Virus record (IMG/VR): IMGVR_UViG_3300044213_000107
Coordinates: 124,001 to 188,000 of that record
Reading direction: 5' to 3' (one strand)
Length of the DNA: 64,000 nucleotides
In this document: piece by piece, positions 19,328 to 21,801 of the stretch
How the letters are laid out: the number at the start of each line of letters is the position of its first letter
Numbering within the stretch: position 1 is the stretch's first letter
The notes under the pieces: model-generated
The model's database searches: none
The model's input: the letters and a program-made list of their open reading frames with translations, nothing else
Told to the model about the DNA's origin: nothing
Position numbers and translations under genes: made by a program

Positions 19328-20326
19328 TTAGTCAGAATTTTGCAAGGGCTTGATCTTAAAATTGGACTTGGGTAAATGCCCTTGCATAGGCAGTCTAGCA
19401 TCTAATTTGTCAGGAGTTAAATAAAATCCGCATTGATTACAGGTATTCTCGGGCAATCTTTGTGTTTCAAACCAAGCATCTATTTCATTATCTTGGGAGT
19501 TAATGCCCACCGTTTTATAATCTGTGTAATAAGGTGCCCAGTCAGGATCTTCTGTTAAGTTATAACGCTCAAGTGTATCACCTATAGTTGCACGTACTGG
19601 ACATTTGTAAACATCTCCACGATAAATTTGTACATAGTTTTTAATATGACACATTGAATGATTTTGATTTTTTGCTTCTGTGTCAGTGTAAGGCCAAACA
19701 GGTTTTAAGGTGCTTCCGTATCCAGTATAATGCGGCACAAAAGGACTGTCGTGTTGAGCAGTTAAATTTAAAATAACATAATGATTATCATCGTTGGGCT
19801 TGCTCAGTATACTAAATTTTTTATAATCAGCATCCCAGGGTATATCTGTTTTCCAATACCAACCTTTTCCAGGCCATTTTGCTTCGTACGCGGCTATGAT
19901 CATGTCTTTTAATTTGGCATAGTTTGTAACTACTAAACTACTATATGGTTCAATATCACTGTGTTTAGTAACACTTAATGCCATGTTAACACCATTAGGA
20001 TCAACAAAACATTCATCAATTCGATCAAACAATTTTTCTAAATAATAGCCATTTGTATTAACCCATACATGACCATTTCGTGGCCATGTACGACGTGCGG
20101 CCAAATACCAATCTACCACCTGCGGATGCATCAGTGGTTCACCACCAAAGAGATTAACACGCTCAGGATTAATTCGTTTGCCCCAGAACGCCAACCACTC
20201 TTCAGCATCTTCTAATCGTACAGTGCCTTTTACACGATCATGATCACTAAATGTGCAACACCCTTCACATGCCAATTGGCAACTGCGTATAATAACTAAG
20301 TCTAAATGTTTTACTGGATGCTTCAT
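19328..20326 (-). CDS. Radical SAM protein with a C-terminal SPASM/twitch-like region
   Basis: CQLACEGC, FGGEPL, NTNG, C..YKCP..CNQC; start reset to MKHPV (ATGA overlap). Confidence 0.9.
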   Translation of the reverse strand: MKHPVKHLDLVIIRSCQLACEGCCTFSDHDRVKGTVRLEDAEEWLAFWGKRINPERVNLFGGEPLMHPQVVDWYLAARRTWPRNGHVWVNTNGYYLEKLFDRIDECFVDPNGVNMALSVTKHSDIEPYSSLVVTNYAKLKDMIIAAYEAKWPGKGWYWKTDIPWDADYKKFSILSKPNDDNHYVILNLTAQHDSPFVPHYTGYGSTLKPVWPYTDTEAKNQNHSMCHIKNYVQIYRGDVYKCPVRATIGDTLERYNLTEDPDWAPYYTDYKTVGINSQDNEIDAWFETQRLPENTCNQCGFYLTPDKLDARLPMQGHLPKSNFKIKPLQNSD

Positions 20327-21033
20327 GCGGTTAGATAATATAATTGTACACGTTTCAACCACTCGTCTGACCAGTGTTTAAATTCTTCTGTGTCTACCAC
20401 AAACTCTAGATATTCAGGAGTTGAATACGATCCATCTTCTAGTTGTTTAGGTTGTACACACATCATAATAACACCTTGGTCGATGTTGGTACCGTGTGTT
20501 TCGTTGTGTGCGGCTGCATAGGCTGCTAGTTGTAAAAAGTAATCGCCGATGTATTCACGCCGTTTAACTTTGTTACTTTGCTTGAAGTCTATGATCGCAG
20601 GACGACCTTTGTATACACCAATGCAGTCTGTGGTGCCGGCGTATAGTCCCGAATAATACACAGGAACTTCAACACCCCAGAATTCACTGACATTTTCTAG
20701 TCCTTGTAGAATAACCTGTGCAGCCATAAACCACGACGGGTGGGCATAAGGATTTGAAGGGAACTGCATCATCTGCTCACTTAGTATATACTGTTCTAAG
20801 TAGGCATGCATTCGTGTTCCACGATTTGCGGCTTCTGTGACAATTTGTTGTGCACGTTGTTCTCCCACAGCCTTTTTCCAATTGGCCAATGCTTGCCGAG
20901 ATTCTTCACTTTTGGTTTTATCTAAGATTGTTGTTACAGACGGAACTTTACTGCCATCTGGCAAACAATAATGTCTTTTACCCTCTATAGTTGTTCTACT
21001 AAGAGGGGCATAATTATATGGAGATTTTATCAT
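20323..21033 (-). CDS. PD-(D/E)XK exonuclease (Cas4/MGME1-like)
   Basis: PSVTTIL, RGTRMH, YAGTTDC, IIDFKQS, QLAAYA. Confidence 0.88.
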   Translation of the reverse strand: MIKSPYNYAPLSRTTIEGKRHYCLPDGSKVPSVTTILDKTKSEESRQALANWKKAVGEQRAQQIVTEAANRGTRMHAYLEQYILSEQMMQFPSNPYAHPSWFMAAQVILQGLENVSEFWGVEVPVYYSGLYAGTTDCIGVYKGRPAIIDFKQSNKVKRREYIGDYFLQLAAYAAAHNETHGTNIDQGVIMMCVQPKQLEDGSYSTPEYLEFVVDTEEFKHWSDEWLKRVQLYYLTA

Positions 21034-21036
21034 TCT

Positions 21037-21357
21037 TTATATTCGGAAACTTTGACCGCAACCGCATTTATCACGTTCATTTGGATTTTGAAATTCAAAG
21101 CCTTCATTTAGGCCATTTTTAACATAGTCTACAGTCATGCCTTGTAAGTATACACAACTTTTTGGATCTACAAATATTTTACAACCTGCACAGTCGATAA
21201 CTTGATCTTCAACAGTGGGTGTATCTACATATTCGAACACATACGCAAGACCACTACAACCAGTTGTTTTTACACCTAGCCGAATACCTTCACCATGTCC
21301 TCGGCGACTAATAACTTGTTTAATTTTACTGGCAGCGGTATCAGTTAATGTTATCAT
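21037..21357 (-). CDS. iscA: A-type Fe-S carrier IscA
   Basis: MITLTDTAA, GCSGLAY, F.NPNE..KCGCGQSF. Confidence 0.95.
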   Translation of the reverse strand: MITLTDTAASKIKQVISRRGHGEGIRLGVKTTGCSGLAYVFEYVDTPTVEDQVIDCAGCKIFVDPKSCVYLQGMTVDYVKNGLNEGFEFQNPNERDKCGCGQSFRI

Positions 21358-21740
21358 GTTTCTTTTTATAATCTTCTACTGCAGCTTTAATAGCGTCTTC
21401 GGCTAGAATTGAACAATGGATCTTTACTGGTGGTAGCGCAAGTTCTTGAGCGATATCTGAATTTTTGATCTGTGTTGCCTTATCAATGTGCATACCTTTG
21501 ACCCATTCGGTAATCAATGAACTTGATGCGATTGCACTGCCGCATCCATAGGTTTTAAATCTCGCATCTGTTATTGTTCCAGTTGCAGAGTCAACCTTAA
21601 TTTGGAGTCTCATTACATCTCCGTTAACCGCAAGCTGGGGCACCGACTAAGCCGGTCCCAACTTGCGCATCTCCTTTATCAAAAGTTCCCACATTACGTG
21701 GATTTTCAAAATGATCTATTACATCTTTACTGTAAGCCAT
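21341..21740 (-). CDS. iscU: Fe-S scaffold IscU interrupted by 7 extra nt (in-frame TAA plus frameshift) at APAC-G|D; recoded, split or pseudogene
   Basis: MAYSKDVIDHFENPRNVGTFDKGDAQVGTGLVGAPACG* (21740-21624), then GDVMRLQIK...GCGSAIAS...PPVKIHCS in the +1 frame. Confidence 0.9.
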
Positions 21741-21801
21741 AACTATCTCCCGTGTGAAATGTAGTATATAATATTTACATACTACAAGTCAAAATTTTTG
21801 A

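What the first reader, a model, noticed from the sequence alone, without database searches (positions are those of the whole stretch)
21341..21740. iscU broken by exactly 7 nt at the catalytic Cys-Gly-Asp: candidate ribosomal bypass, frameshift or naturally split scaffold
Seen (minus strand): GCT TGC GGT TAA C GGA GAT GTA ATG. The N-terminal 38 aa (MAYS...GAPACG) stop at TAA 21626-21624, and the rest of a motif-complete IscU (GDVM, GCGSA, PPVKIHCS) continues in the +1 frame. Removing 7 nt restores the canonical APACGDVM. Both halves are otherwise undecayed, and the gene has a promoter, an RBS and an intact iscA partner. Known: the equivalent Cys37 and Asp39 of E. coli IscU govern cluster binding and release; T4 gene 60 bypassing uses a Gly take-off codon, a stop and a matching Gly landing codon; prfB shifts +1 at a stop. 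Inference, three testable models: (a) a 7-nt hop from GGU to GGA giving wild-type IscU; (b) a +1 shift at GGU-UAA-C giving ...CGNGDVM; (c) two cistrons, since the insertion creates a GGAG SD 5 nt before ATG 21613, giving a 38-aa peptide plus a 90-aa chain. RNA-level excision by a phage nuclease/ligase is a fourth, weaker option. A stop placed right after the Fe-S-ligand Cys could make expression responsive to Fe-S, cysteine or release-factor status.
Basis: partly seen in the sequence, partly recalled or inferred. Interest (0 to 1): 0.87.

Follow-up and report, generated by a model that had tools for sequence, protein, structure and literature searches.

The report
Mobile stop-hop bypass cassette in phage iscU
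The 7-base break in this phage's iron-sulfur scaffold gene is one copy of a widespread element that ribosomes most likely hop over, helped by a conserved RNA hairpin, and that probably shields the gene from a homing nuclease.

Summary
On the minus strand iscU reads TGC GGT TAA C GGA GAT GTA ATG, and both pieces match Pfam NifU_N.

It is neither an artefact nor a private mutation. About 145 distinct phage iscU sequences from viral and metagenome contigs are broken at the same codon. None of the cellular genomes scanned is.

The inserts are 6 to 10 nt long and almost all follow one grammar: Gly codon, stop, 0-4 nt, Gly codon, then Asp-Val. Only a hop of peptidyl-tRNA-Gly from the first GGN to the second fits every insert length.

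- **Two-cistron model:** fourteen relatives have Leu instead of Met after Gly-Asp-Val and no nearby start codon. This rules the model out for them.
- **RNA hairpin:** every interrupted gene tested, and no intact one, has a hairpin whose 3' arm ends in the take-off codon. Its pairs covary at synonymous sites.
- **Selection:** both halves stay under strong purifying selection.
- **Mobility:** the 5' part of the gene with the insert is mobile. It needs 2 state changes on its own tree but 18 on the 3'-part tree.
- **Nuclease gene:** an HNH-like nuclease gene lies directly upstream in 130 of 181 interrupted loci. It is absent from this window.

This parallels T4 gene 60/MobA. No protein or RNA data exist yet.

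The parts
21763..21792 (-). Promoter-like site (TTGACT, 18 nt, TATACT) upstream of iscU
   Evidence: 10 of 12 consensus matches. This is a consensus match only, not tested.
21747..21751 (-). Ribosome-binding site GGGAG, 6 nt before the iscU ATG
   Evidence: read directly. The identical GGAGATAGTT-ATG is found in L086/L087.
21627..21740 (-). iscU ORF1: 38 codons from Met1 to Gly38. The last codon, GGT (21629-21627), is the proposed take-off codon.
   Evidence: NifU_N profile positions 1-35. Across interrupted relatives dN/dS is 0.10-0.11.
21671..21676 (-). [quoted passage not shown]
   Evidence: GGAG/GAGG at -49..-45 in 107 of 115 interrupted genes and in 0 of 71 intact genes at that place. Its role is inferred only.
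21629..21667 (-). Conserved 5' stem-loop. The outer stem pairs 21657-21667 with 21629-21639. The inner stem pairs 21651-21656 with 21642-21647. The last paired base is the first G of the take-off codon.
   Evidence: -27.9 kcal/mol, z -3.7; 10 of 10 outer pairs in 115 of 115 interrupted genes versus 3-7 of 10 in 71 intact genes; compensatory changes at synonymous sites, 94.9% paired versus 31-42% for slid controls.
21620..21626 (-). 7-nt coding gap: stop TAA (21626-21624), spacer C (21623) and landing codon GGA (21622-21620)
   Evidence: The same grammar (GGN, stop, N0-4, GGN, GAY, GTN) holds in about 145 distinct relatives, found with search patterns that did not require it.
21341..21619 (-). 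iscU ORF2: translation resumes at GAT (Asp39) and runs to the TGA stop at 21343-21341. It carries the GCGSA and PPVKIHCS motifs.
   Evidence: NifU_N profile positions 38-124. dN/dS is 0.06-0.12 inside all-interrupted clades.
21037..21357 (-). iscA, overlapping the 3' end of iscU by 17 nt
   Evidence: Fe-S_biosyn, E 6e-22.

Best explanation
The interruption is a programmed short translational bypass, a 'stop-hop'. The proposed sequence of events is as follows. A ribosome decodes Gly38 (GGU) and finds UAA in its A site. Peptidyl-tRNA-Gly lets go of the codon and the mRNA slides 7 nt. The tRNA re-pairs with GGA and decoding resumes at GAU (Asp39). One ordinary IscU chain is made from two reading frames.

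[quoted passage not shown] I infer that it drives or biases the forward slide by refolding as its 3' arm leaves the ribosome, as proposed for the 5' stem-loop of T4 gene 60. I also infer why the insert exists: it breaks the DNA target of an HNH-like homing endonuclease. That gene sits immediately upstream of iscU in most relatives. The nuclease gene, the 5' part of iscU and the insert spread together by gene conversion into intact phage iscU genes. The window's copy keeps the insert and hairpin but has no nuclease gene.

Shown: the grammar, the hairpin covariation, purifying selection, the mosaicism and the linkage to the upstream ORF. Inferred: the hop itself, the hairpin's role, and the nuclease activity and its target.
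For: 1. Grammar. Search patterns that imposed nothing on the insert found 6-10-nt inserts at this one site. 113 of 122 unique sequences read GGN-stop-N0-4-GGN-GAY. A second pattern imposed nothing downstream of the stop. All 28 further genuine iscU junctions it added have stop-N0-4-GGN-GAY-GTN.
2. One mechanism for all lengths. Insert lengths switch between 7, 8, 9 and 10 nt among sequences whose N parts are 95% or more identical.
3. No second start. 17 of 118 unique sequences have Leu after Gly-Asp-Val, and 14 of those have no in-frame start for 30 or more codons.
4. Translated landing codons. The Gly, Asp and Val codons after the stop vary only synonymously.
5. Hairpin. It is fully paired in 115 of 115 interrupted genes. 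Compensatory pairs are AT62/CG43/TA9/GC1 and TA68/CG24/TG10/GC10. Intact genes pair only 15-27% at those positions. Mean folding energy is -25.2 versus -10.8 kcal/mol. The independent count agrees.
6. Selection. dN/dS is 0.06-0.12 for both pieces, with synonymous divergence of about 1-2.
7. Weak stops. At the site the stops are TGA 61, TAG 37 and TAA 20, and TGA-C is the commonest context. Long ORFs in the window end in TAA 34, TGA 19 and TAG 2.
8. Mobility. L087 combines a window-like N part with an L084-like C part and has an extra ORF upstream. 43 pairs are discordant in one direction and none in the other. The breakpoint lies about 21 nt past the junction. The state needs 18 changes on the C-part tree and 2 on the N-part tree.
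9. Upstream ORF. It is present in 130 of 181 interrupted loci against 1 of 72 intact loci. It has an invariant D-H...N...N motif and NUMOD3 and weak HNH matches. Its relatives sit between conserved genes of T4-like phages.
10. Not cellular. 185,579 bacterial and archaeal species genomes gave a single hit, which is not iscU.
Against: - There is no peptide, ribosome-profiling or transcript evidence, and efficiency is unknown.
- In the window the take-off GGU and landing GGA would be read by different tRNA-Gly species under standard wobble rules. Across the family only about 67% of pairs are cognate, against about 53% expected by chance.
- The hairpin's 3' arm lies inside the ribosome at take-off, so its role depends on a refolding model that is untested here.
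- The nuclease call is weak. Pfam HNH E-values are 0.02-0.06, and the PDB sequence and fold searches were empty.
- The window has no copy of that ORF.
- Seven distinct sequences carry TGT instead of a stop.
- Hairpin, insert and N part are physically linked, so their co-occurrence alone does not prove function. Only the covariation inside the hairpin does.
Confidence: 0.72

Rival explanations
1. Split scaffold. Translation ends at the stop and starts again at the conserved Met41 ATG, using GGAGAT as the SD. This would give a 38-aa peptide and a 90-aa chain that assemble.
For: In the window an ATG lies 10 nt after the stop, with GGAG 5 nt before it. Both pieces are under purifying selection.
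Against: 14 relatives with the same grammar and hairpin have Leu at that position and no in-frame start for 30 or more codons. The landing codon is GGC, which is not SD-like, in about a third of cases. The Gly-Asp-Val codons ahead of the ATG vary only synonymously, so they appear to be translated. Both chains would lack Asp39 and Val40.
Confidence: 0.07
2. Length-specific recoding without a hop: a +1 frameshift at GGN-stop for 7- and 10-nt inserts, stop readthrough for 6- and 9-nt inserts, and a +2 or -1 shift for 8-nt inserts. Each would add 2-3 residues next to the cluster-binding Cys.
For: UGA-C, the commonest context, is also the prfB shift context (from my own knowledge). For the window a +1 shift would give ...CGNGDVM...
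Against: It needs three different mechanisms in sequences that share one hairpin and swap insert lengths while their N parts stay 95% or more identical. GGN cannot re-pair at +1 on GNU/GNA. The second Gly codon would have no reason to be invariant.
Confidence: 0.06
3. The 6-10 nt are removed from the RNA, either by nuclease and ligase or by polymerase realignment between the two GG, with the hairpin acting as the signal.
For: A conserved hairpin abuts the insert. The flanking GG repeats could guide realignment.
Against: RNA removal does not explain why a stop codon in the upstream frame always follows the first Gly codon directly, nor why weak stops are preferred. No RNA family matches. I know of no precedent for excision of so short a segment.
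Confidence: 0.05
4. Selfish disruption. The cassette inactivates iscU, the phage manages with the host's IscU, and the apparent constraint is inherited from recently invaded intact genes.
For: The cassette repeatedly invades intact genes, so part of the C-part divergence predates invasion.
Against: C-part dN/dS is 0.06-0.12 inside clades of 4-20 all-interrupted members, with synonymous divergence of about 1-2. The N part, which always travels with the insert, has dN/dS of 0.10 outside the hairpin and the ORF overlap. There are no internal stops in 93 interrupted genes. The hairpin is maintained by compensatory change.
Confidence: 0.05

Closest known systems
Phage T4 gene 60 bypass with the MobA homing endonuclease cassette
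   Same: - Gly take-off and Gly landing codons.
- A stop directly after the take-off codon.
- A 5' stem-loop upstream of take-off.
- An insert in a highly conserved coding site.
- An HNH-type free-standing nuclease gene immediately upstream.
- Spread by gene conversion.
- Copies that keep the bypass after losing the nuclease.
Sources: bioRxiv 10.1101/2022.08.31.505936 and 10.1101/2024.12.09.627546, and here.
   Different: - The gap is 6-10 nt, not 50, so there is no room for the A-site or extended stem-loop inside it.
- The hairpin abuts the take-off codon instead of lying 9 nt upstream.
- The host gene is iscU and is not split into two genes.
- No nascent-peptide signal has been identified.
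- Take-off and landing codons often differ at the wobble base.
- The nuclease is about 200 aa, and no homology to MobA was shown.
Synthetic 'stop-hops' in E. coli (Weiss, Dunn, Atkins and Gesteland 1987, as cited in PMC5009743)
   Same: [quoted passage not shown]
   Different: Those were engineered, low-efficiency events without stimulators. The 2016 review states that no natural occurrences were known. Here the arrangement is natural, conserved and accompanied by a covarying hairpin.
Streptomyces phage phiHau3 terminase short bypass (PMC10732093)
   Same: Natural 10-nt inserts, and a 7-nt one in a relative, in a phage gene. Bypassing was supported by mass spectrometry in E. coli when UAA replaced the slow codon.
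   Different: The trigger is the rare UUA sense codon, not a stop. It occurs in 3 of 100 terminase genes. No homing nuclease link and no covariation-supported hairpin were reported.
prfB +1 programmed frameshift
   Same: A weak UGA-C stop in the A site makes the pause.
   Different: prfB uses re-pairing on an overlapping codon and an SD 3 nt upstream. Here the codons do not overlap, the distances are 6-10 nt, and the SD-like motif lies 45 nt upstream.
Bypass elements ('byps') of Magnusiomyces mitochondria (mentioned in PMC5009743)
   Same: Many short mobile inserts in coding sequence are skipped by ribosomes.
   Different: Those are 27-55 nt long, mitochondrial and scattered over many genes. 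This is a single site in one gene family.

Membership tests
IscU / NifU_N Fe-S scaffold | Match to the NifU_N profile along its whole length | tested here: met
   The N piece covers profile positions 1-35 and the C piece 38-124 of 127. The two pieces were searched apart.
IscU / NifU_N Fe-S scaffold | Three cluster-binding Cys and Asp39 (the CGD, GCGSA and HCS motifs) | tested here: met
   The motifs are present in the window and are 95% or more conserved in interrupted relatives. Cys37-Gly38 and Asp39 lie on opposite sides of the gap.
Programmed translational bypassing (gene 60 type) | Take-off and landing codons for the same amino acid or tRNA, flanking a non-coding gap | tested here: met
   GGN sits on both sides in about 138 of 145 sequences. 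The first two bases always match and the wobble base matches a single tRNA in about 67%.
Programmed translational bypassing (gene 60 type) | A slow-to-decode codon (a stop) directly 3' of the take-off codon | tested here: met
   The exceptions are 7 distinct TGT variants.
Programmed translational bypassing (gene 60 type) | Stimulatory mRNA structure 5' of take-off | tested here: met
   Searches show a hairpin supported by covariation. That it stimulates bypassing is inferred.
Programmed translational bypassing (gene 60 type) | Stem-loop within the gap that occupies the A site | tested here: not met
   The gap is 6-10 nt, which leaves no room.
Programmed translational bypassing (gene 60 type) | Nascent-peptide signal acting in the exit tunnel | not testable with these tools
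   The upstream peptide is ordinary IscU sequence, so no separate signal can be told apart.
Programmed translational bypassing (gene 60 type) | A single polypeptide made from the two ORFs | not testable with these tools
   This needs mass spectrometry or a reporter assay.
Homing-endonuclease mobile cassette | Nuclease gene adjacent to the protected site | tested here: inconclusive
   Met in relatives: 130 of 181 interrupted loci against 1 of 72 intact loci. Not met in the window, where tblastn finds no homolog in 64 kb.
Homing-endonuclease mobile cassette | Co-conversion tracts and phylogenetic incongruence around the site | tested here: met
HNH endonuclease (the upstream ORF of relatives) | A beta-beta-alpha-metal motif with His and Asn residues, and significant family matches | tested here: inconclusive
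   D143, H144, N166 and N175 are invariant. Pfam HNH matches are only E 0.02-0.06, and NUMOD3 reaches 7.7e-8 in 2 of 12 members. PHROG HNH and homing families score 1e-4 to 7e-3 in a few members. The PDB searches were empty.
prfB-type +1 frameshift | P-site codon able to re-pair at +1, an SD about 3 nt upstream, and a fixed +1 geometry | tested here: not met
   Inserts of 6, 8 and 9 nt occur in the same family. No SD lies near the site.

The most novel reading that the evidence does not exclude
This would be the first natural, widespread family of stop-hops. It would be a minimal bypass element in which one hairpin, refolding behind the ribosome, is enough to carry peptidyl-tRNA-Gly 6-10 nt over a stop at useful efficiency. 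It would have evolved as the immunity half of a homing-nuclease cassette that targets the most conserved codons of a metabolic gene carried by giant freshwater phages. The fast turnover of spacer length would then reflect an arms race with the nuclease.
Probability: 0.5. Interest if true: 0.9.

Novelty: new variant of a known kind. Interest (0 to 1): 0.85.

Why it matters
T4 gene 60 has been the main model of efficient bypassing for decades. The 2016 review says shorter counterparts have 'long been presumed' to exist, yet no natural stop-hops were known.

This family supplies more than a hundred natural variants of a much simpler element. It has three stop codons, five gap lengths, and matched or mismatched landing codons. 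It also has a hairpin whose pairs are defined by covariation, which makes it a ready-made mutational series for testing the idea that refolding of exiting mRNA drives the ribosome forward.

It would also be a second, independent case in which a bypass insert travels with a homing nuclease. That would suggest a general way for mobile elements to protect a conserved coding target without damaging the protein.

For annotation, such genes are currently called as truncated or broken iscU.

Tried and rejected
- **Assembly error or private mutation:** rejected, because the same site is interrupted in many independent assemblies.
- **Close cultured relatives:** megablast and blastn against 50,697 phage records found none. 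tblastn of the C piece found only intact iscU.
- **tRNA genes in the window**, to look for a phage tRNA-Gly or a suppressor: none found.
- **Rfam on the region:** nothing.
- **Other hop-like sites in the window:** none carry the full signature.
- **Structure-based naming of the upstream ORF:** the PDB profile search and PDB Foldseek search were empty. BFVD gave only uncharacterised phage proteins.
- **Synonymous-site entropy as a general scan for RNA elements:** it showed little except at the hairpin's 5' arm.
- **Literature:** searches for an iscU bypass or an iscU homing nuclease found nothing relevant.

The pieces of IscU were always given to the search tools separately. The tree matrix joined the two coding blocks without the junction columns.

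Full report
**1. The observation.** On the minus strand the window reads GCC CCA GCT TGC GGT TAA C GGA GAT GTA ATG. A 38-codon ORF (21740-21627) ends at TAA 21626-21624. The rest of the gene continues one base out of frame to a stop at 21343-21341. Searched apart, the N piece matches Pfam NifU_N positions 1-35 and the C piece positions 38-124 of 127. iscA follows and is intact. A promoter-like site and a GGGAG ribosome-binding site precede the gene.

**2. Origin of the window.** The window is part of a 260,723-bp viral contig. It has no close relative among 50,697 deposited phage records. The nearest DNA matches for iscU in that collection are records labelled as an Acinetobacter phage, and these carry a whole bacterial isc operon.

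**3. The interruption is shared.**
- I ran tblastn with both pieces on loci fetched through the C piece and through a neighbouring phage protein. About 80 loci had the canonical TGY GGN GAY GTN ATG. Eight loci, two of them copies of the window's own contig, had inserts of 7, 8 or 9 nt at exactly this place.
- I then scanned with a pattern that fixed only the flanking codons (Val-Gly-Ala-Pro-Ala-Cys-Gly, then Asp-Val-Met) and left 2-32 free bases between them.
- Viral contigs gave 93 hits and metagenome contigs gave 75. One genome from each of 185,579 bacterial and archaeal species gave a single hit, which is not iscU.
- Among 122 unique sequences the insert is 6, 7, 8, 9 or 10 nt long, and 113 read GGN, stop, 0-4 nt, GGN, GAY.
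- A third scan fixed only the upstream codons plus T-R-R and imposed nothing downstream. All 28 further genuine iscU junctions it found have stop, 0-4 nt, GGN, GAY, GTN.
- In total about 145 distinct junction contexts obey this grammar.

**4. What the grammar excludes.**
- A +1 shift could serve only the 7- and 10-nt inserts, and readthrough only the 6- and 9-nt inserts. Yet sequences whose N parts are 95% or more identical differ in insert length, for example 7, 8 and 10 nt in L128, L258 and L292.
- A hop of peptidyl-tRNA-Gly from the first GGN to the second serves every length and restores Cys-Gly-Asp-Val.
- The two-cistron idea fails on 17 of 118 unique sequences that have Leu instead of Met after Gly-Asp-Val. 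Fourteen of them have no in-frame ATG, GTG or TTG for 30 or more codons, which is beyond the second Cys motif.
- The Gly, Asp and Val codons that lie after the stop vary only synonymously: GGA/GGC/GGT, GAT/GAC and GTA/GTC/GTT/GTG. They therefore behave as translated codons.
- The stops at the site are TGA 61, TAG 37 and TAA 20, with TGA-C the commonest context. Long ORFs in the window end in TAA 34, TGA 19 and TAG 2.
- This fits selection for slow termination. That UGA-C is a weak termination context in E. coli is from my own knowledge.

**5. A conserved RNA hairpin.**
- In all 115 interrupted contexts examined, ten consecutive bases pair with the ten bases that end at the first G of the take-off codon. 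The 5' arm lies in the Ala-Gln/His-Val-Gly codons.
- The 71 intact genes form only 3-7 of these 10 pairs.
- Two pairs join third-codon positions and change in step. One is AT 62, CG 43, TA 9 and GC 1. The other is TA 68, CG 24, TG 10, GC 10, GT 2 and AT 1. Neither has an unpaired case. The same positions pair in 15% and 27% of intact genes.
- I counted with the dedicated tool on 45 diverse sequences:

| Measure | Observed | Control |
|---|---|---|
| Cells forming a standard pair | 94.9% | 31-42% with the 3' partner slid by 1-3 columns |
| Covariation score | 0.238 | 0.122 in shuffles (0 of 500 reached the observed value) |

- Mean folding energy of the 44-nt stretch is -25.2 kcal/mol in interrupted genes and -10.8 in intact ones.
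- In the window the hairpin spans 21667-21629 and folds at -27.9 kcal/mol, z -3.7.
- An SD-like GGAG or GAGG lies 45-49 nt before the take-off codon, just 5' of the hairpin base. It is present in 107 of 115 interrupted genes and in none of the intact genes at that place.
- No Rfam family matches the region.

**6. How the hairpin may act (inference).**
- With the take-off codon in the P site, the 3' arm lies inside the ribosome, so only the inner stem can be folded.
- A forward slide of 6-10 nt releases about that many bases of the 10-11-nt arm and lets the outer stem zip up.
- This is the 'pairing of exiting mRNA as driver' model proposed for the 5' and extended stem-loops of T4 gene 60 (bioRxiv 10.1101/2024.12.09.627546).
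- The role of the SD-like motif is open. It could be brought near the landing site by the folded hairpin, or it could space the following ribosomes.

**7. The genes are functional.**
- None of the 93 complete interrupted genes has an extra stop.
- dN/dS is 0.11 for the N piece and 0.08 for the C piece, against 0.09 for both pieces of intact phage genes, with synonymous divergence above 1.
- The cassette moves (see section 8), so I repeated the test inside clades of the C-part tree whose 4-20 members are all interrupted. There dN/dS is 0.06-0.12 with dS 0.9-1.9.
- For N-piece codons 6-22, which lie outside the hairpin and outside the overlap with the upstream ORF, dN/dS is 0.10.

**8. The cassette is mobile.**
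- L087 (interrupted) and L084 (intact) come from syntenic, closely related phages. Their C parts are 94% identical but their N parts only 64%.
- About 155 nt of L087 are almost identical to the window. This stretch runs from the ribosome-binding site through the junction and about seven codons further.
- Among interrupted genes, 43 pairs have N parts 95% or more identical with C parts under 85%, and no pair shows the reverse. Among intact genes one pair does.
- Identity breaks down a median of 21 nt into the C part.
- The interrupted/intact state needs 18 changes on a tree of the C part but only 2 on a tree of the N part.
- A single cassette lineage has therefore entered many iscU lineages by recombination just 3' of the insert.

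**9. The linked ORF.**
- L087 has an extra 199-codon ORF inserted directly upstream of iscU and overlapping its start. L084 lacks it.
- A homolog occupies that position in 130 of 181 interrupted loci that have enough upstream sequence. Among 72 intact loci only one has it, as a 50-residue remnant.
- The proteins are about 195-215 aa long. They have a Cys cluster, two PWNKG repeats and an invariant D-H...N...N block.
- Family matches are weak. Pfam HNH scores E 0.02-0.06, NUMOD3 reaches 7.7e-8 in 2 of 12 members, and PHROG HNH or homing-endonuclease families score 1e-4 to 7e-3 in a few members.
- A model with pLDDT 74 found nothing in the PDB. It did find uncharacterised proteins of T4-like phages in BFVD.
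- By tblastn those relatives are ORFs lodged between the tail sheath and tail tube genes, and one is annotated as a homing endonuclease.
- I therefore call the ORF an HNH-like free-standing homing endonuclease candidate, not a proven one.
- The window has no homolog in its 64 kb. It carries the insert and hairpin without the nuclease, as some gene 60 relatives do.

**10. Comparison with what is known.**
- The closest system is T4 gene 60 with MobA. There a bypass insert protects a conserved coding target from the nuclease encoded just upstream, and the whole unit homes.
- The iscU element shares the following:
  - the Gly-stop take-off;
  - the Gly landing;
  - a 5' stem-loop;
  - the nuclease linkage;
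  - the mosaic signature of homing.
- It differs in the gap length (6-10 nt against 50), in lacking a stem-loop within the gap, in hairpin position and in the gene targeted.
- Engineered stop-hops have been known since 1987, but the 2016 review states that no natural ones were known.
- Phage phiHau3 terminase offers a short natural bypass triggered by a rare UUA codon.
- I found no paper on an iscU bypass or an iscU-linked homing nuclease in the library searched.

**11. Open points.**
- Seven distinct sequences nested inside a TAG-TTA-GGT clade read GGT TGT T GGA with no stop. The four loci of this type that had enough upstream sequence to judge lack the nuclease ORF.
- One sequence, L199, has no landing Gly.
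- Take-off and landing codons are cognate for one tRNA in only about two thirds of cases, and the window's GGU to GGA pair is not one of them.
- Efficiency, any regulation and the actual nuclease target are unknown.
- No cultured phage carries the element.

**12. Verdict.** The window holds a nuclease-less copy of a mobile stop-hop cassette. I put about 0.8 on translational bypassing as the decoding mechanism and about 0.65 on the homing-immunity origin.

Noticed in passing
L127, L146, L159, L170, L228, L234 (junction region): Some variants read GGT TGT T GGA: a Cys codon replaces the stop, and the hairpin looked intact in one variant checked by eye. They nest inside a TAG-TTA-GGT clade. The four of these loci with enough upstream sequence to judge (L159, L170, L228, L234) lack the upstream nuclease ORF. 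They could be decaying copies or could hop at a sense codon.
   Followed up: partly
L199 (junction region): One sequence reads GGT TGT TGA C GAT and has no second Gly codon before Asp. It is the only clear breach of the landing-codon rule.
   Followed up: no
L024:2739-2888: This intact iscU has a 50-residue remnant of the nuclease-like ORF directly upstream. It may be a hit-and-run case or a resistant target.
   Followed up: no
L128, L258, L292: The N parts are 95% or more identical, yet the inserts are 7, 8 and 10 nt (TGA C, TGA CG, TAA CTTT). The spacer changes much faster than its flanks.
   Followed up: partly
window 19328-20362 (-) and L087:6772-8094: Radical SAM genes lie beside iscU and iscA in the window and between them in L087. 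The phage-borne Fe-S assembly genes may serve phage radical SAM enzymes.
   Followed up: no
window 20323-21033 (-): A PD-(D/E)XK / DUF2800-like nuclease gene lies just downstream of iscA. The Pfam matches are at about the curated threshold. No link to the cassette was seen.
   Followed up: no
L001 (CAKLQF020000009.1 34382-43101): Records named 'Acinetobacter phage MD-2021a' in the phage collection carry a full bacterial isc operon (iscR-iscS-iscU-iscA-hscB-hscA-fdx) next to ppiD and hupB. They look like bacterial contigs filed as phage.
   Followed up: no
L333:2150-2770 and L334:2018-2737: Relatives of the nuclease-like ORF in T4-like Klebsiella and Aeromonas phages sit between the tail sheath and tail tube genes. 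This position is typical of free-standing homing endonucleases.
   Followed up: partly
window 21671-21676 (-): An SD-like AAGGAG 3 nt 5' of the hairpin base is present in 107 of 115 interrupted genes and absent at that place from all 71 intact genes. Its function is unexplained.
   Followed up: partly
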